This document shows positions 12,281-19,395 of a DNA stretch of 64,000 bases, piece after piece. The notes beneath the pieces were generated by a model. The model was not told the DNA's origin. It did not search any database and worked only from the letters and a program-made list of their open reading frames with translations. Origin of the DNA: Thecamonas trahens ATCC 50062. Its lineage: Eukaryota > Protista > Apusomonadida. The DNA lies in contig NW_013657660.1 of NCBI RefSeq assembly GCF_000142905.1, positions 396,056 to 460,055 on the forward strand, written 5' to 3'. Within the stretch, counting starts at the first letter, position 1. Each line of letters begins with the position of its first letter. The position numbers were made by a program, and so were the translations under genes.

Positions 12281-14905
12281 ATGGGCCGGAGAAGAGGACG
12301 AAAGTCGCACTCACCCATACACCCCTCCGCATCTGTTCCTACGGCTGCACGCCCTGCTACTTCGATGCCGACTGCTCCCACGTCGCCGACGCCTGCACCG
12401 CCATCGCCGAGGTCAGCAACACCACCATCGGCAGCGGCAGAGCCATCGCTGGAAAACTCGTTTGGGCTCAAGGCCAAGGTTGCATCGCTGGTGGCAACTG
12501 GCATGACCTTTGCGCTCATCCAGCTCTCCACCTCGGCATCGTCGCTGGTCAAATGGCTCCTCTCACTGCTGTGGAATGACGTCCTTCTCCCGCCGCTCAC
12601 CAGGCTCGCCGACACATACATTGTCGCCTGGTTCACATCACTCTCTGAGGCTCAGATCTTCACGGCGCTCGGGGTCATCACCGTGCTCGGAAGCATTGGC
12701 CTCGCAATCACGTATTACTTGGCCGAAGTTGTGGCCGCGATGCTGGCCTCGCTGGTAGCGCTTCCTCTCTGTGCAGTGGCACTCGCCTGGCGGCTGCCGC
12801 TGCCGTACGGATGGGCGCAAAGCCTTGCTGGGCTCCATCCCTTGGCGGCGACATCGTCCATGCTTCTTCTACCCAGCGTATTGATTGCGGTCCCGCGGCT
12901 TGATCGACCGGTCCAGCTAGCGGTGGCTCTCTGGGCCGCGCTCGCGGTCTTGCCGTGGCCGTTCATGCTGCAGGCGGTGCTCCCAGCAGAGATTGTTGGG
13001 GCAGTCATGTCACACCTCTCGTATCCGTTCCCATGTGTTGCGGCCGGTGGCGGTCGGGCGCTGTGCCGGTTTGTGTCGGATCCTGCCTCGCCACTGCACC
13101 TCAACGTTATTGCCAACGCCCCGCTCCCGCTCGGCGACCTCCTTGCCCGGATGGATGCACCGCAGCTCGCCGCTTCGCGCAATGTGACGCTTGCAGTTGT
13201 TCATCTCGGTCCACTGGCTCTTGCACACTGGTCGCGCCTCGTCCCGCTCCTCATAGCCTCTGCTGTTCTCCTTCTACTCTCGCAGCGAGTGCAGCGGCAC
13301 GCTTCTACCGCCGTGATGAGCGCAATGTGCCTCATGATTGTCGTCTGCGGTGCGCTCATGCTCTCATCGCTCACCGGTGTTACTACTGGTCCACCTGTTG
13401 CCCTTGCGCAGCAGCTTGAGTGTTCACAAGCGGTGGCGGTTCTACGCGAGACGCATCGCGTGCCGGAGGCGTTCTGGGCCATCCCCAACGCAGGAAACTA
13501 CACTGGAAACGCGCTGGCAACGTCGCGCGAGTCACGATGGTACGGGCGATCGCTGGCCCATGGCCGCGGGACCGTGACGCTGGCACTCCCTCACGTTGCT
13601 CCTCACCTCATTGTCGCGCTGCGAGGCGAGTGGGAGACCGGGCGGCTTGTCTATGGCCGTGTGGAGCTCAACTGGACAATGAGCTGCAACGAGACCGAGA
13701 CACTTCGCACCCAAGCGATCGCTGCGGTCCTTGATGAGGCCTTGGACGCGCTTGGCTCACTCTGGACGCCGGAGCGCGGGCGAGTCTTCAGCTTTGGCGC
13801 TGACGGGCCTGCCGCGTCGTCGCGACCGCCGGCGTTCTTTACGCAAGCGCTCCCGGCATCGCTGCCGAGCCTTGCGTGCGAGGCCAGTAGCGAGTGGACG
13901 AGCGGGAGACTGAATATCATGCTCACGGCGGCTGTCGCTAACGGGCGTGTGAGCGTGTCGAGTGGCCGTGGCGCTTCGCCTCTCTCCATCACGCTGCGCT
14001 CGGATGGTCCGGGATGGCGACTGGGTGGTCTGATCTCTGCGCCCATGGGTGATGTGGTGGCGTGGCATTTGGCGCTGCCGAGCGGTGGCGGTGAGCTGGA
14101 GTATGAGGGCGGGTTTGGAGTCGATGGGCCGGCCGGTGAAGGCTTTGTTGCTCTCCATGCTTTTGACGAGGGTGGCGGTCACATTCCAGGCTTTGCCTTT
14201 GTTCTCGATCCGCCACGGATTGCCTCCGAGTTTGCGCGGACAAGCGCAAGGCCTAACCGGTACGCCGACCGGATTCCGCTGGCGGACAGCCCGACGTCGG
14301 CCACTGGCGACGGGCGGGCGGTGCTCGAGGTCCACCATCTTCAGTTTGTGGGTCTCTTTGCCGAGGCGCTTCCGCTGCTGCGGTACGACGCCTACGGCGC
14401 GGCAGGACTCGAGGGGTGGCGGGCAGTGGTGCACCGTGGATGGCTCCGGCTCGGCTCGCCGCTCTGGCTAGCGCCGCTGATGGAGAGCCTACCCGCCGGC
14501 GAGTTTGCAGGGTTCTCTGCCAACACGATTGTGTCGGCTGGCGGCAATGTGACGTGTGCACTGGCCAAAGACTCGGCTCTTGGGTGCGGCGGCGGCGTCG
14601 TGGTGGCTGCCGACGATGGGTACGTGTTCCGTGGGCGGATCAAGGGCTCGCAGACACACGGTGCCGGCGTGCTCTCCCATCCACGGTCTGAAGATGCGGC
14701 GTACGGGTACTGGAATGCTGGACTTCGCAACGGGCAGTTTGTGTTGTACGACCCGGTCCGTGGCCGCTGGGAGTCGGTCCGCTACCGCTCCGGCGTCGTC
14801 CTCTCGTCGAAATCGGTGAAGCGATCAGGGTCAACAGCATCACACGAGGAGCAGATCGTTGAAGCGTTTGTGGCGCGAGTCCTTGCTGATGCAGGAAGCG
14901 CCTGA
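12281..14905 (+). CDS. Hypothetical multi-pass membrane protein with C-terminal MORN-like repeats
   Basis: ATG at 12281 (MGRRRGRKS), several hydrophobic helices, then YEGGFGVDGPAGEG, FRGRIKGSQTHGAG and YGYWNAGLRNGQF, which resemble MORN repeats. Confidence 0.7.
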   Translation: MGRRRGRKSHSPIHPSASVPTAARPATSMPTAPTSPTPAPPSPRSATPPSAAAEPSLENSFGLKAKVASLVATGMTFALIQLSTSASSLVKWLLSLLWNDVLLPPLTRLADTYIVAWFTSLSEAQIFTALGVITVLGSIGLAITYYLAEVVAAMLASLVALPLCAVALAWRLPLPYGWAQSLAGLHPLAATSSMLLLPSVLIAVPRLDRPVQLAVALWAALAVLPWPFMLQAVLPAEIVGAVMSHLSYPFPCVAAGGGRALCRFVSDPASPLHLNVIANAPLPLGDLLARMDAPQLAASRNVTLAVVHLGPLALAHWSRLVPLLIASAVLLLLSQRVQRHASTAVMSAMCLMIVVCGALMLSSLTGVTTGPPVALAQQLECSQAVAVLRETHRVPEAFWAIPNAGNYTGNALATSRESRWYGRSLAHGRGTVTLALPHVAPHLIVALRGEWETGRLVYGRVELNWTMSCNETETLRTQAIAAVLDEALDALGSLWTPERGRVFSFGADGPAASSRPPAFFTQALPASLPSLACEASSEWTSGRLNIMLTAAVANGRVSVSSGRGASPLSITLRSDGPGWRLGGLISAPMGDVVAWHLALPSGGGELEYEGGFGVDGPAGEGFVALHAFDEGGGHIPGFAFVLDPPRIASEFARTSARPNRYADRIPLADSPTSATGDGRAVLEVHHLQFVGLFAEALPLLRYDAYGAAGLEGWRAVVHRGWLRLGSPLWLAPLMESLPAGEFAGFSANTIVSAGGNVTCALAKDSALGCGGGVVVAADDGYVFRGRIKGSQTHGAGVLSHPRSEDAAYGYWNAGLRNGQFVLYDPVRGRWESVRYRSGVVLSSKSVKRSGSTASHEEQIVEAFVARVLADAGSA

Positions 14906-14964
14906 AACTTTGCTTGCGCTGGCAATCGTGGGTTTGTTGAAGAGTTTACGGACATGCCCGAGGA

Positions 14965-16052
14965 TCATCTCCGCATGGGCAAGAGAACACCATGAATGTT
15001 TGGAATGACGCCTCCGCCTGCCAAGCAGACCTTGTGGAACATGCGCTCAAGCTCCATGTCGTTGCCGATGGCAAGTTTGACGTGGCGAGCGGTAAGGCGA
15101 CCAGCTTTGGTGTCGCGCATGGCATTGATGGCCAACTCGAGGACCTCACTCACCACAAACTCGACGGCGGCGGCGACTGCCGGCAGCGTCTCACGGTTGT
15201 AGATCGGGGCGAGGAGCTCCTGCGACTCGAAGACCTGCTTGACGTGGGAAAGATGGAGAAGGACTGGGACGCCTGAGCCAGCGGCGAGCGAGCTTAGTGT
15301 GCGTGCCACATCAGCTGCCGCATACTTGGCCACCTCGCCCGGGAAGTGCAGCTTGATGGCCGAGACGACGTCGTCGGCAATGAACGCAGAACGCTTGTTC
15401 ATCTTGGCCAACGGCACCATTTCCCGATACAAGCTGGCAATGATGTCGTCAATGAGATCAGCGAGCAGAGCAGCGGCTCCCTTGGACAGTGAGACTCTAG
15501 TGGGCGCGCTTGTCTCGGCAGCTGTGGCTCCTCCGGCCCCGGCCTGCGCTGTGGTTACCTTCTTGACCAGAGCACGCAAGCTCTTAATCCACGCTGCTGG
15601 CCTGTCGGCCGACTTGAAGACGCCGCCCGAGGCCTCGGCCACCCTGCGGGCTTCTGCCAGCGCTTCGACCTCCTCGGCGGTGTAGATGCCGTCGACAGAG
15701 CCCAGAACTGGAGCCACAAACGCCAGATCGTCGTCGTCCGGCCCGTCGCCTACGTCAGAGGCCGAGTCGCTCACTGCCCCTTCGTCGCCACCAGACGCCG
15801 ATGCCCCAGCCTGCGGGGAAAAAAAGCTTGAGATCCCAGTTTGCGCAGCCTGCCATTGTCCGTGTCCGTCCGCCGGGTGGCGCCTCCGTGAGTATGTCGT
15901 CGCGGGCAGGAGTAGACCTTCCATTGGCCAGTACGTGCGTGACGAGAGGGCACAGGGAAGGGAGGCAAGAAAAGAACGTTGATGCCCGTCACGCCCCCCT
16001 CCTCCCCCTCTCCCCCTTCCCCCCCTTCTCCTCCCCTAATTTGACTTACCAT
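14965..16052 (-). CDS. Single-chain histone H2B-H2A doublet; ATG-only exon 16050-16052, predicted intron 15850-16049
   Basis: H2B fold: SLSKGAAALLADLIDDIIASLYREMVPLAKMNKRSAFIADDVVSAIKLHFPGEVAKYA. It is followed in frame by an H2A fold and docking domain: AAAVEFVVSEVLELAINAMRDTKAGRLTARHVKLAIGNDMELERMF.KVCLAGGGVIPNIHGVLLP. Start context GCCATG|GTAAGT gives both a Kozak and a splice donor. Confidence 0.9.
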
Positions 16053-16278
16053 GGCTTGCTCACCAAAACAGCGTGGAGTGGCAATGGTCTCTCTGATGGT
16101 GCCTGCTGGTGCCGGCGCCGACAGCGAGATTCGACCGGGCTGGCGGCTGCCGAGCCATGGACGGTGGCGAGCCCACCGCCGTCGCCTCGGCCCTCTCCGC
16201 CGGCCTCGGCCCCCTCCGCCGGGTGAGGCCGACCACCGCTCTGCAGTGCTCTTGGCGGACAGGCGGAGGGGAGGCAAG

Positions 16279-19200
16279 ATGTTCCACGCACAGCAACCGA
16301 ACCCAAACAAACCACCGGACGAGAACTCGCTGCGGATTGGGGTGGCGTTTGCGCCGGTGGCGGAGGGTGAGCGCCTGCGGGAGCGCGGCCAACCGCCGTT
16401 TGTGACCCACACGACAGCGCAGCGGCAGGCGGCGTCTGCGGCAGACAGCGGGTCGTCGCGGGCAGCGGCAGCGGCAGCAGCGTCTGCAGCAGCGGCAGCG
16501 GTACCGGTCAACGCGGTGTCGGTCAAGGACCCGCTGGGCGAGGTGCCCGACACGCTGTTCTCGTTTGACGTGGTGGGCGAGGCGGGGACGCCGCTCAGCG
16601 AGCTGTACACCGAGTTGGTCAAGCCGTTGTCGTCGGCGGTGGTGGGCGGGACGTCGTGTGTGGCGTTTGTGTTTGGCCAGTCCGGCTCGGGACGGGCAAC
16701 AGCGCTGGTCGGCGGACTCGACGGCTCGCCGCGTGGCCTCGTTCAGCTGGCAGCCAGCGATCTGCTTGCCGAGATTGCCAAGTTCAAGGCGCAGCGGGCG
16801 ACGCTGCTGGCACGGTCTGGCTCGGCATCGTCACTTCTACTGGAAGATACCGAAGGAGTGTCGGCGACAGGGCGGATTCGGCGGGCGGGCTCGCGGTCGC
16901 TGCTGTCCTCGGCTTCGCTTTCGGACGTGCGAGCCATGACGCTCACGCTGTCGGCAATGGAGATCCACTGCGAGCACGTGTCCGACTTGCTCGAGCCGTA
17001 CATGGAGCCACTCGGGGCGGGCCTGGATCTCAGCCCGCCGACCGAAGCGAGTGAGTGCACGGCCCCGGCGCGCGACTTTGAGATGCGCAAGCCGCTTTCG
17101 GATCGGAGCGTTGCGGGCGGCCGGACGCTGGCGTCGGCCAAGTCGTCGACGAGTCTTTCGGCCGCGCGGCGGAGTATGTCGGGCACCCATGCCATGCGCT
17201 CGATTCGCAAGCAGCTCTCGGTGGCGTCGATGGCGACAAACAGCGAACTGCGGACGCCGCGGCGGATCTCGCCGGTCGAGCTTGCCGACTCGACCATTGC
17301 ATTCCCCAAGCTCGCCAAGGTTAAGTTGAGCTCGATGGCCGAGGCCGAGGCTGCGGTTCATGAGGCACTGGCCAACCGCGGGCTGCCGCTCTCGCGGACG
17401 TCTTACGACCGGCGCAATGCACACGCGGTCATCCAGCTCTCGCTCGAGCGCGAGCTCCTGCGCGACTCGACCGGCGACTCGGTCACCGTCTCGTCGTCGC
17501 TCTTCTTTGTTATTATGGCCGGCTCAGAGCTCCTGACCCAGGACCGGGCCAACTTTGCGCCGGAGCAAGCGTCAGCGTACAAGGTGCTCGACTCGACGTC
17601 GTCGATTCTGTCTGCGCTCTCGAAGCGGAACCTGACGTACGGCGCGTACGACGGCGCGCTTCTCACTCGCATGCTCCGGCCGTACCTCGGCCTGCAATCG
17701 CATGTGGCGGTGGTGGGTACCGTCCTTCCCTCGGTCTCCAACTTTGAAGAGTCGCTGGTCACGCTCCGGCTCTTGGGCGACATGCACAAGTCGATGCAGC
17801 ACAACACCGGGCTCGGAGCTACCGAGGCGCTCATTCGTGACAAGGATGCTACCATCCGACACCTCATCAAGGAGCTGGCCGAGGTGAAGGAGGATCTTGC
17901 GGTGGCCAAGGAGACAAACTTGAACCAGCGAATGCAGATCTCGCACTTGTCTCGGCCGGGCTCGCGCGGTGGGCGCGGCGGGCTCGGTGATGGGCTTGGT
18001 GGGCGCGGTGGCGGCGATAGCCTGCCGCGGTCCGATTCGGACGCGTCGGGCTCGTGGCTCGAGCCGACGCGCTCAAACCGGTCGCGGTCCGGTCGATCTG
18101 GTGGCGGTGGTGGCGGCTCGGCGTCGGTCGGGATCTCGCTCTCGGGTCCGGAGCCGTCGTTGCAGAGCTATGAGACGCTCAAGGATCTCATTGCGCAGCT
18201 GCAGGCGGAGAAAAAGTTGCTGTATGAGACGCTGCAGAAGCACAAGGCCCAGTTTGAGAGCGTCCAGCTCGAGATGCGGCGGAAAGAGGCCGAGATCTCA
18301 GTCGAGGTTGCCGGGTACAAGCGCTCGCTTCGGAGCGTTCAGGCCGAGCTCGACGAGTCAGTCCGCCGACACGAGGCTGAGACAGCGGCGCTTCACGAGA
18401 GCCACGCGCGCGATGTCCGCAAGCTGCTGGAGAACCACGCCAAGTCGCTGGAGCGGATGCGAGCGGCGCAGGAGGCCAAGCTCTCGTCGATTCCGCCGGC
18501 ATCGATGGCCGACGCGTCCAAGATTGATTATGTCGAGGCGCTGGTTAAGGCGCGGAGCGAGTACAAGGCTGCAGTGGGTGAGATGGAGGACGCGGCATCT
18601 CGCCAGGCGCGGGCGCTCGAAGACAAGATTGCGTCACTGCAGTCGGAGCTGACTTCGGTGACCAACTCGCTCGCGGCGTCACAGGCGAGTGTGGCGAGCG
18701 CCAAAGATGCGTACAAGCGTGACATGGGCCTTTTCCTTGACTACGCGACCACCTTTCAGCACGTGGTTGAGCGGGCGCTGGCGCGATCGTACCCGGTCGA
18801 CGCGCCGCAGCTCGAGTCGTTCTTCCTCCCCAAGGCTCTGACCTCGACGGATGAGCTTGTGCAGCGGCTGCCGAACCTGGTCACTGCGCTCAAGGGCGTT
18901 GTGACCAAACTGCACCCGCTCGACGTTGTGGCTGAGACCAAGATGGCGAGCCCGCGGCAGACGTCGTCGGCGCCGGACGCGCTTGATCTCCACGCCAACC
19001 TGCTGGCTATGGGTGACCGCGCGCTCCGTGCCGAAGTCCGCAAGCTTCGCAGCTACATTGCCGACAAGCGGGCGGGCGACGAGACAAAGTTTGCCGCCCG
19101 CGTCCGCGAGGCTGTCTTCAAGGAGCTCGCCTCGGATAAGACAGTGCAGTACATTGCGTCGCTGGAGGACTCGCTTGCTCGCCTCCGCAAGGACCTGGCC

Positions 19201-19395
19201 CGCGAGCGGTCCCGCCGGCGCGAAGTCGAGGTCTCCAGCCGCTACCGCCCGAGCGAAGGCCCCAACCGGCGCAGCCTTCGCTCGGCTCGCTCATCGCGGA
19301 GCCCGTCGCAAGCTCAGAGCCGCCTCGTCGACTCGGTTGTCGCCGCGCTGGTGGCCGAGGAGGACGTGTCAGGCCCCGCGCGCCGGCACAGCTGA
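16279..19395 (+). CDS. Divergent kinesin-like protein (N-terminal motor-like domain, long coiled coil)
   Basis: FSFDVV, VFGQSGSGRAT (P-loop), SAMEIHCEHVSDLL, HAVIQL, IMAGSE, LTRMLRPYLG and FEESLVTL appear in kinesin order, followed by a coiled coil. Start chosen at ATG 16279. Confidence 0.85.
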   Translation: MFHAQQPNPNKPPDENSLRIGVAFAPVAEGERLRERGQPPFVTHTTAQRQAASAADSGSSRAAAAAAASAAAAAVPVNAVSVKDPLGEVPDTLFSFDVVGEAGTPLSELYTELVKPLSSAVVGGTSCVAFVFGQSGSGRATALVGGLDGSPRGLVQLAASDLLAEIAKFKAQRATLLARSGSASSLLLEDTEGVSATGRIRRAGSRSLLSSASLSDVRAMTLTLSAMEIHCEHVSDLLEPYMEPLGAGLDLSPPTEASECTAPARDFEMRKPLSDRSVAGGRTLASAKSSTSLSAARRSMSGTHAMRSIRKQLSVASMATNSELRTPRRISPVELADSTIAFPKLAKVKLSSMAEAEAAVHEALANRGLPLSRTSYDRRNAHAVIQLSLERELLRDSTGDSVTVSSSLFFVIMAGSELLTQDRANFAPEQASAYKVLDSTSSILSALSKRNLTYGAYDGALLTRMLRPYLGLQSHVAVVGTVLPSVSNFEESLVTLRLLGDMHKSMQHNTGLGATEALIRDKDATIRHLIKELAEVKEDLAVAKETNLNQRMQISHLSRPGSRGGRGGLGDGLGGRGGGDSLPRSDSDASGSWLEPTRSNRSRSGRSGGGGGGSASVGISLSGPEPSLQSYETLKDLIAQLQAEKKLLYETLQKHKAQFESVQLEMRRKEAEISVEVAGYKRSLRSVQAELDESVRRHEAETAALHESHARDVRKLLENHAKSLERMRAAQEAKLSSIPPASMADASKIDYVEALVKARSEYKAAVGEMEDAASRQARALEDKIASLQSELTSVTNSLAASQASVASAKDAYKRDMGLFLDYATTFQHVVERALARSYPVDAPQLESFFLPKALTSTDELVQRLPNLVTALKGVVTKLHPLDVVAETKMASPRQTSSAPDALDLHANLLAMGDRALRAEVRKLRSYIADKRAGDETKFAARVREAVFKELASDKTVQYIASLEDSLARLRKDLARERSRRREVEVSSRYRPSEGPNRRSLRSARSSRSPSQAQSRLVDSVVAALVAEEDVSGPARRHS

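What the first reader, a model, noticed from the sequence alone, without database searches (positions are those of the whole stretch)
14965..16052. Cellular single-chain H2B-H2A histone doublet
Seen: complete H2B and H2A folds fused in the order H2B-H2A. The docking domain and most acidic-patch residues are kept (E..E..E, ND.E). There are no basic tails, there is a ~20-aa insertion in H2B loop 1, H2A helix-1/L1 arginines are lost, and the K118/K119 ubiquitin site is replaced by MRR-stop. Known: H2B-H2A doublets are characteristic of Marseilleviridae and related giant viruses and are uncommon as stand-alone nuclear genes. This gene has host-like GC, a predicted spliceosomal intron and no viral neighbours. 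Inference: a domesticated or independently fused variant forming weakly DNA-bound nucleosomes, or acting as a decoy or chaperone.
Basis: partly seen in the sequence, partly recalled or inferred. Interest (0 to 1): 0.85.

Follow-up and report, generated by a model that had tools for sequence, protein, structure and literature searches.

The report
Cellular fused H2B-H2A histone gene
The marine flagellate Thecamonas trahens has a real, spliced and transcribed nuclear gene that joins histones H2B and H2A in one chain behind an acidic head. It belongs to an old family of fused histones carried by the cell itself, a format so far tied mainly to giant viruses.

Summary
Window 14965-16052 (minus strand) in Thecamonas trahens encodes a single-chain H2B-H2A histone. 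It is filed at NCBI as "histone H2A", XP_013758406, under a 271-aa model.

Environmental RNA contigs tile the coding region. One contig crosses a 200-nt GT-AG intron that sits directly after the ATG, giving a 295-aa protein instead of 271 aa.

The fold matches engineered single-chain H2B-H2A dimers. The H2A docking domain and most acidic-patch residues are kept. Both basic tails and the H2A helix-1/loop-1 arginines are gone. An acidic N-terminal extension (net charge -12) replaces the H2B tail.

Neighbours, GC and GC3 are host-like. The gene lacks the 3' stem-loop of the canonical histone genes.

It is not a lone oddity. The genome holds at least six fused histone genes, all among host genes. 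Three types, including this one, have counterparts in an uncultured marine close relative with conserved gene neighbourhoods. These six proteins form one clade (98/95) apart from giant-virus doublets.

The most likely function, which is inferred, is a replication-independent, fast-evolving variant H2A-H2B module with weakened DNA contacts. The origin (cellular fusion or ancient viral exchange) is unresolved.

Other readers of this scan noted other members of the family on other DNA of this genome.

The parts
16050..16059 (-). End of exon 1: 5' UTR (seen at least to 16059) plus the start codon ATG at 16052-16050. It lies head-to-head with the kinesin ORF on the plus strand.
   Evidence: The RNA contig X1 record 2 carries a 9-nt overhang ATGGCTTGC, which equals window 16051-16059.
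15850..16049 (-). Spliceosomal intron of 200 nt, GTAAGT...GGCAG, placed directly after the ATG.
   Evidence: The junction 15849|16050 is read from the RNA contig. The GT-AG ends and the length were computed.
14965..15849 (-). Exon 2: 294 codons plus the stop codon (14965-14967). The whole protein is 295 aa.
   Evidence: Translation. RNA contigs from four runs of three studies lie at 14936-15154, 15173-15323, 15481-15708, 15484-15634 and 15602-15850.
15604..15849 (-). Acidic N-terminal extension that replaces the basic H2B tail. The first 85 protein residues have net charge -12 and pI about 4.
   Evidence: Charge count. The AF2 model has low confidence here, apart from a helix at exon-2 residues 58-73.
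15670..15747 (-). Conserved acidic-aromatic motif (D-rich run, L-A-F, then V-D-G-I-Y). F44, D53 and G54 are invariant in the two doublet types.
   Evidence: Alignment A1; coordinates.
15286..15603 (-). H2B histone fold: helix 1, loop 1, helix 2, loop 2, helix 3 and the C-terminal helix.
   Evidence: PDB alignment; H2B profile hit at E 1.5e-13; AF2 helices with pLDDT mostly above 90; coordinates.
15493..15555 (-). Insertion of 21 aa, rich in Ala, Gly and Thr, in H2B loop 1.
   Evidence: Gap columns against the C2-type doublets, and a shorter insertion in P0002. pLDDT is 73-83 here.
15271..15285 (-). Five-residue linker (AAGSG) between the H2B C-terminal helix and the H2A part. There is no H2A N-terminal tail or N-terminal helix.
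14968..15270 (-). H2A histone fold plus docking domain, ending LLPMRR. Acidic-patch E/E/E and D.E are kept. The helix-1/loop-1 basic residues are lost. Loop-2 K..R and RH are kept.
   Evidence: Pfam PF16211 and PF00125; 51% identity to Thecamonas canonical H2A over the last 69 residues; match-state alignment; AF2 pLDDT 90-98.

Best explanation
Shown:
- This is a nuclear gene of Thecamonas trahens for a single-chain H2B-H2A histone of 295 aa, transcribed and spliced.
- It belongs to an old cellular family of fused histones, and it is the most divergent type in its clade.

Inferred mechanism:
- The two halves fold onto each other as a permanently linked H2A-H2B dimer.
- Because the docking domain and most of the acidic patch are kept, this dimer can take the place of a canonical H2A-H2B dimer on an H3-H4 tetramer.
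- It would hold DNA less tightly. It has no basic tails, the H2A helix-1/loop-1 arginines are lost, there is a 21-aa insertion at the H2B loop-1 DNA contact, and the core charge is +5 instead of about +20.
- It cannot carry the usual tail marks or the H2A K118/K119 ubiquitin.
- The gene lacks the histone 3' stem-loop, so it would be supplied outside S phase, as replacement variants are.
- The acidic N-terminal extension, with two conserved acidic-aromatic elements 12 residues apart, is proposed to act as a built-in shield or handle for the DNA-binding face, in the way acidic cap-anchor segments of H2A-H2B chaperones do. This last step is the weakest.
For: Identity and fold:
- PDB phmmer and Pfam.
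- AF2 model with mean pLDDT 81.8 and the core above 90.
- The best Foldseek matches are single-chain H2B-H2A chimeras, with TM-score normalised to the target 0.80-0.85.

Expression and splicing:
- RNA contigs from three studies, one of which spans the intron.

Host context:
- Neighbouring genes and GC/GC3.

Variant-type regulation:
- The canonical 3' stem-loop is found only at the canonical H2A/H2B pairs, never in the window.

Docking domain:
- PF16211 is above its cut-off here.

Charge and lost contacts:
-.

Family and age:
- Paralogs in the same genome.
- Counterparts P0002, P0006 and P0044 lie on GC-rich marine contigs. Their neighbouring genes are 58-82% identical to Thecamonas genes and are neighbours there too.
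- The six proteins form a clade at 98/95 that holds when either long branch is left out. The clade is also recovered with each half alone.

Chaperone precedent:
- Acidic cap-anchor and double-anchor segments bind the DNA face of H2A-H2B (PMC6101569).
Against: - There is no direct evidence of nuclear or chromatin location.
- The accession was not found in the parts of the Thecamonas histone-proteomics tables that are held.
- The whole protein is acidic (pI 5.4), which is unusual for a nucleosome component.
- AF2 does not place the conserved N-terminal motif with confidence (pLDDT below 50 for residues 36-55).
- The H2B tyrosine that receives the chaperone anchor is R here and H in P0002, so a literal cap-anchor contact is doubtful.
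- Identity to P0002 is only 36-42%, while the neighbouring genes are 58-82% identical. This means very fast change or paralogy and could reflect relaxed constraint.
Confidence: 0.5

Rival explanations
1. It is a soluble mimic that is not part of nucleosomes. The linked dimer keeps the acidic patch and the chaperone- or importin-facing surfaces but has lost DNA affinity. It would therefore act as a decoy or buffer for factors that bind H2A-H2B, such as chaperones, remodellers, acidic-patch readers or proteins of giant viruses. Alternatively it could be a histone-fold subunit of another complex.
For: - The protein is acidic overall (pI 5.4), the core charge is strongly reduced, and the H2A helix-1/loop-1 arginines are lost.
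- The acidic patch is kept.
- It has diverged very fast relative to its neighbours, as is often seen in conflict genes.
- Non-chromatin double histone folds do exist. The SOS histone domain is a weaker structural match, TM-score 0.77.
Against: - The docking domain that contacts H3-H4 is kept and passes Pfam's cut-off. A pure decoy for patch binders would not need it.
- The loop-2 DNA-contact residues of both halves are kept (H2B KRS; H2A K..R and RH).
- No extra domain links it to another complex.
Confidence: 0.25
2. It is a gene captured from a giant virus (an endogenised viral histone doublet) that has been adapted to the host, and the whole apusomonad clade goes back to such a transfer.
For: - The H2B-H2A order in one chain is typical of Nucleocytoviricota (on 10.1101/2021.11.30.470311; on PMC11222145).
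- Viral doublets are structural matches.
- Another fused gene of this genome, the C20 triplet, groups weakly with a triplet from a clearly viral contig.
- The backbone of the doublet tree is unresolved, so the root is unknown.
Against: - There are no viral genes around this gene or around the other fused genes examined.
- It has host GC and GC3 and a spliceosomal intron.
- The clade is separate from the giant-virus metagenome-assembled (GVMAG) doublets at 98/95, and those viral loci have GC 0.37-0.41.
- Three paralog types were already present before the split from a close relative, with conserved gene neighbourhoods.
Confidence: 0.15
3. It is a decaying or neutrally drifting duplicate with no function of its own.
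For: - It has the longest branch of the family and only 22-38% identity to the canonical halves.
- Two of the four environmental variants are non-synonymous.
Against: - The 295-codon frame is intact, and the gene is correctly spliced and transcribed in samples from three studies.
- The invariant fold and docking residues are kept.
- The fold is predicted with confidence.
- A counterpart with the same private motifs is kept in a relative.
Confidence: 0.1

Closest known systems
Engineered single-chain H2B-H2A dimers used in structural work (for example PDB 6W4L, 8YJM chain G, 6K00 chain D)
   Same: They have the same order of halves and a short linker from the H2B C-terminal helix into H2A. They are the best sequence and structure matches (E 3e-22; TM-score normalised to the target 0.80-0.85).
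   Different: Those are laboratory constructs made from canonical histones. This one is a natural gene with an acidic N-terminal extension, a loop-1 insertion and lost basic contacts.
Giant-virus H2B-H2A doublets (Marseilleviridae such as Melbournevirus 7N8N chain B, pithovirus-like genomes, and giant-virus metagenome-assembled genomes (GVMAG))
   Same: One polypeptide with H2B before H2A. The docking-type C-terminus is often kept. They are structural matches and 28-32% identical.
   Different: They are encoded in AT-rich viral genomes among viral genes. This gene is host-embedded, GC-rich and intron-bearing, and its clade is separate from them at 98/95. The viral doublets seen here start with basic N-termini, while this clade has acidic ones.
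Other fused histones of Thecamonas trahens: the C2 doublet, the C26 GTPase-FG-zinc finger-H2B-H2A-H3 protein, the C29 H2B-HMG-H2A protein, the C3 four-fold repeat and the C20 triplet
   Same: They are in the same genome and in host context. The C2 and C26 types share a clade, the invariant W at the start of H2B helix 1 and the acidic region ahead of H2B.
   Different: The window gene is the most divergent. It has the lowest core charge and a private H2A helix-1 motif (ESQELLAP.Y) shared only with P0002. C29, C3 and the C20 triplet do not join the clade.
Replacement H2A variants with weak DNA wrapping (short H2A variants such as H2A.B)
   Same: Fast evolution, lost basic contacts, missing C-terminal tail, and a gene that is not of the replication-dependent type. 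The first three are taken from established knowledge of those variants, not tested here.
   Different: Short H2As have lost the acidic patch and part of the docking domain. This protein keeps both and is fused to its H2B partner.
Non-chromatin double histone folds: the SOS histone domain and the ABTB2/BTBD11 histone-like domain
   Same: Two histone folds in one chain. SOS 1Q9C is a structural match with TM-score 0.77.
   Different: There is no Pfam Histone_ABTB hit at E up to 1, and no DH-PH, Ras-GEF, BTB or ankyrin parts. Sequence identity to true H2A reaches 51% in the docking half.

Membership tests
Histone H2A | Histone fold followed by the H2A C-terminal docking domain | tested here: met
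   Pfam PF16211 scores 32.1 bits (cut-off 20) and PF00125 scores 30.8 bits (cut-off 26.4). The last 69 residues are 51% identical to Thecamonas canonical H2A. AF2 helices have pLDDT 90-98.
Histone H2A | Acidic patch (E56, E61, E64, D90, E91, E92 in human numbering) | tested here: met
   Five of the six are kept; the E91 position is M (alignments). Of the H2B partner residues, the first is E (in GEV) and the second is D.
Histone H2A | Basic N-terminal tail and helix-1/loop-1 arginines that contact DNA | tested here: not met
   There is no tail. The canonical R/K positions read H, Q, E, L and I. The H2A part has net charge +1 against +13 for the canonical protein.
Histone H2B | Histone fold plus the C-terminal helix, pairing with H2A | tested here: met
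   End-to-end alignment with the H2B part of PDB chimeras. H2B profile hit at E 1.5e-13. Foldseek matches.
Histone H2B | Basic N-terminal tail | tested here: not met
   It is replaced by an 85-residue extension with net charge -12.
Giant-virus H2B-H2A doublets | H2B and H2A in one polypeptide, in that order | tested here: met
Giant-virus H2B-H2A doublets | Encoded by a viral genome or a viral insertion (viral neighbours, viral base composition) | tested here: not met
   The neighbours are an E2F/DP factor, a mitochondrial carrier, a kinesin, PAP2_C, TLC, FG-GAP, thioredoxin and C2CD3 genes. GC3 is 0.71, like the neighbours. A spliceosomal intron is present.
Giant-virus H2B-H2A doublets | Nested among viral doublets in trees | tested here: not met
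   The six apusomonad-type rows form their own side of a branch at 98/95, and the giant-virus metagenome-assembled (GVMAG) rows lie elsewhere. The root is unknown, so shared deep ancestry is not excluded.
SOS / ABTB2-type non-chromatin double histone folds | Match to the family's own profile, or the accompanying domains | tested here: not met
   There is no PF26281 hit at E up to 1 and no other domain. SOS is a weaker structural match than true H2B-H2A.
Replication-dependent canonical histone genes of this genome | Conserved 3' stem-loop element after the stop codon | tested here: not met
   The element occurs seven times, all at the canonical H2A/H2B pairs on C9, C14 and C32. There are zero matches in the window even with three mismatches.
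Apusomonad-type fused histone clade (defined here) | Acidic region ahead of H2B, an invariant W at the start of H2B helix 1, a fused H2A with docking domain, and a counterpart in the marine relative | tested here: met
   Alignment A1, charges and trees.
Nucleosomal histone (functional sense) | Found in chromatin, or forms nucleosome particles with H3-H4 and DNA | not testable with these tools
   No multimer modelling, proteomic hit or experiment was available. The proteomics tables that are held do not list the accession.

The most novel reading that the evidence does not exclude
Apusomonads keep an ancient cellular set of fused histones (doublets, triplets and a four-fold repeat) that shares ancestry with the histone repeats of giant viruses. 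It would be either their cellular source or a surviving relic of a fused stage in nucleosome evolution. Within this set, the window gene would be a self-chaperoned, fast-evolving H2A-H2B module shaped by conflict, for example with viruses that bring their own histones.
Probability: 0.2. Interest if true: 0.9.

Novelty: new variant of a known kind. Interest (0 to 1): 0.72.

Why it matters
Histone repeats joined in one chain are used as an argument in the debate on how nucleosomes arose. A 2024 study treats them as viral relics taken from stem eukaryotes, and it notes how rare such repeats are in eukaryotes (PMC11222145).

A free-living relative of animals and fungi that carries a whole family of them bears directly on that argument. 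The genes are expressed, carry introns and are inherited with their gene neighbourhoods. This gives a cellular reference point for rooting the viral repeats.

It also gives a culturable organism in which to ask what a permanently linked, tail-less and weakly basic H2A-H2B dimer does in real chromatin.

The finding also corrects the public gene model (295 aa, not 271 aa) and its name; "histone H2A" hides the H2B half.

Tried and rejected
- Word-indexed protein searches with the whole ORF, with the fold part and with the family alignment found no further members of this type. The protein is too divergent at the 5-residue word level.
- The one metagenome scan returned mainly canonical H2A genes and unrelated doublets. 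L048 turned out to be an H2A-H2B fusion in the other order.
- I first read the MutS gene beside P0002 as a giant-virus marker. I rejected this after it proved 58% identical over its full length to a Thecamonas gene, whose neighbouring kinase (76%) and carboxyl transferase (82%) are also shared.
- Recent gene conversion from canonical H2A into the fused genes was tested. DNA identity is only 67-80% over 98-209 nt, so there is no support.
- I looked for a remnant doublet in the Thecamonas C43 gap that corresponds to the relative's locus. None was found.
- Purifying selection from the three contigs that carry P0002 could not be judged. They are over 99% identical, which is uninformative.
- The held proteomics tables of 10.1101/2021.11.30.470311 lack the accession, and they were cut when stored.
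- No paper names XP_013758406, KNC48993 or A0A0L0DCF7, and none was found that links apusomonads with fused histones.
- The careful tree of the H2A half alone did not finish in time. Only its quick version is reported.

Full report
**What is in the sequence**

The minus strand of window 14965-15924 holds a 319-codon open frame. A sequence search of the PDB aligns residues 145-318 end to end with engineered single-chain H2B-H2A proteins; the best is 6k00_D at E 3e-22. Canonical H2A chains match only the last 70 residues.

Pfam gives Histone_H2A_C at 32.1 bits (cut-off 20) and Histone at 30.8 bits (cut-off 26.4). It gives no hit to the ABTB histone-like family. The exact protein is on record as "histone H2A" of Thecamonas trahens ATCC 50062 (XP_013758406, KNC48993, A0A0L0DCF7) under a 271-aa model. 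The window is G000:C20:396056-460055.

**Gene model and expression**

I laid contigs of four environmental RNA libraries from three studies on 13500-17500. They tile the coding region at 14936-15154, 15173-15323, 15481-15708, 15484-15634 and 15602-15850, with at most two mismatches each.

The last contig matches 249 nt without a mismatch and then carries nine letters, ATGGCTTGC. These equal window 16051-16059. The RNA therefore joins 15849 to 16050. On the minus strand this removes a 200-nt GTAAGT...CAG intron (16049-15850) that follows the ATG at 16052-16050 directly.

The protein is then M plus the 294 codons of exon 2, which makes 295 aa. The same contig runs unbroken through the stretch that the public model treats as an intron, so that model is not supported.

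The joined model was not sent to any tool. A single M was prefixed only inside a script that counted charges.

No contigs lay on the 1.4 kb of the upstream neighbour. Contigs cannot show expression level or strand.

**Anatomy** (coordinates)

- Residues 1-85 are acidic (net -12, pI about 4) and take the place of the basic H2B tail.
- The H2B fold follows (window 15603-15286). It has a 21-residue Ala/Gly/Thr-rich insertion in loop 1 (15555-15493).
- A five-residue linker leads straight into H2A helix 1. There is no H2A tail and no N-terminal helix.
- The H2A fold and docking domain run to LLPMRR-stop.
- Compared with Thecamonas canonical H2A, the basic positions of helix 1 and loop 1 read H, Q, E, L and I. 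Loop 2 keeps K..R and RH, and H2B loop 2 keeps KRS.
- The H2A acidic-patch residues are kept except the middle one of the D-E-E triad.
- The double fold has net charge +5, against about +20 for the canonical H2B core plus H2A. The whole protein has pI 5.4.

An AlphaFold2 model built on 67 doublets has mean pLDDT 81.8, with above 90 through nearly the whole double fold, and a low-confidence N-terminus apart from a helix at exon-2 residues 58-73. Its best PDB matches are single-chain H2B-H2A chimeras (TM-score normalised to the target 0.80-0.85). These rank ahead of the SOS histone domain (0.77) and the Melbournevirus doublet (0.72). Viral doublets lead the viral structure library.

**Context**

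The neighbours are ordinary eukaryotic genes: an E2F/DP factor, a mitochondrial carrier, a kinesin placed head-to-head with the doublet, PAP2_C, TLC, FG-GAP, thioredoxin and C2CD3 genes. GC is flat across the window. The gene's GC3 of 0.71 lies within the neighbours' 0.67-0.81.

The canonical H2A and H2B genes of this genome end with a conserved stem-loop element. That element occurs seven times, only at the canonical pairs, and never in the window even with three mismatches. The doublet is therefore built like a replacement-variant gene, not like a replication-dependent one.

**A family, not a singleton**

Searching the genome with the fold part found further fused genes, and notes from this scan pointed to two more:

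- A second doublet on C2.
- A protein on C26 that joins a Ras/Ran-type GTPase, FG repeats, a RanBP2 zinc finger, and H2B, H2A and H3. The H3 part continues in another frame.
- An H2B-HMG box-H2A protein on C29 that is close to canonical.
- A repeat on C3 with H2B and H2A followed by two further regions that I read by eye as H4-like and H3-like. The H2B and H2A parts are confirmed by profile; the last two rest on my reading and on an earlier first-reader note.
- A triplet on C20, only 23 kb from the window gene.

The C2, C26 and C29 genes sit among host-type genes such as a kinesin, HAUS4, Med14 and gelsolin/RCC1/Arf genes. The flanks of the C3 and C20 loci were read only briefly; one ORF beside the C20 triplet looks like a serine/threonine phosphatase by eye.

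**Relatives elsewhere**

An exhaustive profile-free search of 1.84 billion representative proteins gave 3824 hits. Ninety-nine of the best 150 are H2B-H2A doublets.

The best non-self hit is P0002 (E 3.6e-33). It shares the whole architecture with the window protein, including the N-terminal motif and a private H2A helix-1 motif. P0006 matches the C2 doublet in the same way, and P0044 matches the C26 protein.

All three lie on marine metagenome contigs with GC 0.60-0.63. These contigs come from a cell, not a virus:

- P0006 is followed by an asparagine synthase gene, exactly as the C2 doublet is in Thecamonas.
- The three genes around P0002 are a kinase, a MutS homologue and a carboxyl transferase. 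They are 76%, 58% and 82% identical to three Thecamonas genes that lie within 12 kb of each other on C43.

By contrast, the doublets fetched from giant-virus contigs are 28-32% identical and have GC 0.37-0.41.

**Trees**

On 37 doublets and 223 columns, a careful IQ-TREE run puts the three Thecamonas types and their three marine counterparts on one side of a branch, with ultrafast bootstrap 98 and SH-aLRT 95. Each pair is supported: window with P0002 at 98/93, C2 with P0006 at 100/95, and C26 with P0044 at 100/100. The window type is sister to the C2 type at 93/80. The bootstrap had not fully settled, so its values are rough.

For reference, that tree included a pseudo-doublet joined in a script from the canonical Thecamonas H2B and H2A. 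It falls with C29, away from the clade.

- The clade is recovered in a larger quick tree (support 86) and with the H2A half alone (81).
- With the H2B half alone it also appears (86), though one long-branch environmental doublet, P0103, falls inside it there.
- It survives when either of the two long branches is left out (89-90).
- C29, the C3 repeat and the C20 triplet do not join it. The C20 triplet groups weakly with a triplet from a clearly viral contig.

The three types therefore arose before Thecamonas and its marine relative split, most simply from one fusion. The root of the doublet tree is not known. A deep link to the viral repeats is neither shown nor excluded.

**Rate**

The window type is only 36-42% identical between the two organisms. 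The C2 type is about 60% identical, and the neighbouring genes are 58-82% identical. The lineage is either evolving very fast or the two genes are old paralogs of one type. In Thecamonas the locus that corresponds to the relative's holds no histone remnant.

**Mechanism**

I commit to a variant H2A-H2B module. It is a permanently linked dimer that can dock on H3-H4, because the docking domain and acidic patch are kept. It would hold DNA more weakly and carry none of the usual tail marks, and it would be supplied outside S phase.

The acidic N-terminus has two conserved acidic-aromatic elements 12 residues apart (F44, and D53-G54 followed by Y56). It resembles the cap-anchor and double-anchor segments with which chaperones cover the DNA face of H2A-H2B (PMC6101569). 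I propose it works as a built-in shield or handle. This step is weak. AF2 does not place the motif, and the H2B tyrosine that receives the anchor is not conserved here.

A soluble decoy role is the main rival.

**Literature**

No paper found names the accession or describes fused histones in apusomonads. The chromatin-evolution study that sampled Thecamonas reports doublets for viruses only in the text I could read. [quoted passage not shown]

**Scan context and rules**

Other readers and agents of this scan have already noted other members of this family on other DNA of the same genome.

Noticed in passing
window 16050-16053 and 16051-19395: The doublet's ATG (minus strand, 16052-16050) and the first ATG of the 1114-codon kinesin ORF (plus strand, 16051) overlap in one CATG. 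The two genes are head-to-head with almost no spacer, which suggests a shared bidirectional promoter. The true kinesin start may lie further downstream, since an RNA contig lies at 16246-16396.
   Followed up: partly
window 15775-15924: The public 271-aa model (ME, then an intron, then VSDSAS...) conflicts with an RNA contig that runs unbroken through 15602-15850 and splices to 16050 instead. The supported protein is 295 aa.
   Followed up: yes
L035:2318-3753 (G000:C20:387317-388752), minus strand: A second fused histone lies 23 kb from the window gene. H2B is in one frame and H2A plus H3 are in another, which means a frameshift or a short intron. It has no recognisable H2A docking domain. Its H2A part groups weakly with a triplet from a contig that carries dUTPase, Rpb5, UDG and ribonucleotide reductase genes.
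   Followed up: partly
L003:868-2900 with L019:7374-9146 (G000:C26): A Ras/Ran-type GTPase, FG repeats, a RanBP2 zinc finger, and H2B, H2A and H3 in one reading direction. The last two H3 helices are in a shifted frame. The marine counterpart P0044 (736 aa) has the whole protein in one frame.
   Followed up: partly
L012:712-1959 (G000:C3), minus strand: An open frame with an H2B part (it starts inside helix 2, so an upstream exon is likely), an H2A part, and then two further regions that I read by eye as H4-like and H3-like. Only the H2B and H2A parts were confirmed by profile.
   Followed up: partly
L008:1459-3117 (G000:C29), minus strand: A near-canonical H2B and H2A separated by about 140 residues. 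By eye, that stretch holds an HMG-box-like segment and an acidic stretch; no domain search was run on it.
   Followed up: no
L005:1720-1860 and six other places on G000 C9, C14 and C32: The canonical H2A and H2B genes share a 3' element: a 7-bp stem with a 4-nt loop (GCGCTCT-TNTT-AGAGCGC), followed by a conserved GAGGGCAGAATAACACA box about 20 nt downstream. It is reminiscent of the animal histone stem-loop and downstream element.
   Followed up: partly
P0125 cluster: A 944-aa environmental protein with H2B and H2A folds (by profile), an H3-like C-terminus (by eye) and long spacers. It clusters at 90% identity with a transcript filed under the choanoflagellate Bicosta minor in EukProt. This is either another cellular case or viral RNA in that culture.
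   Followed up: no
P0014, P0019, P0020: Environmental H2B-H2A doublets that begin with a ubiquitin-like domain and carry Gly/Phe-rich ends. Their origin (cell or virus) is unknown.
   Followed up: no
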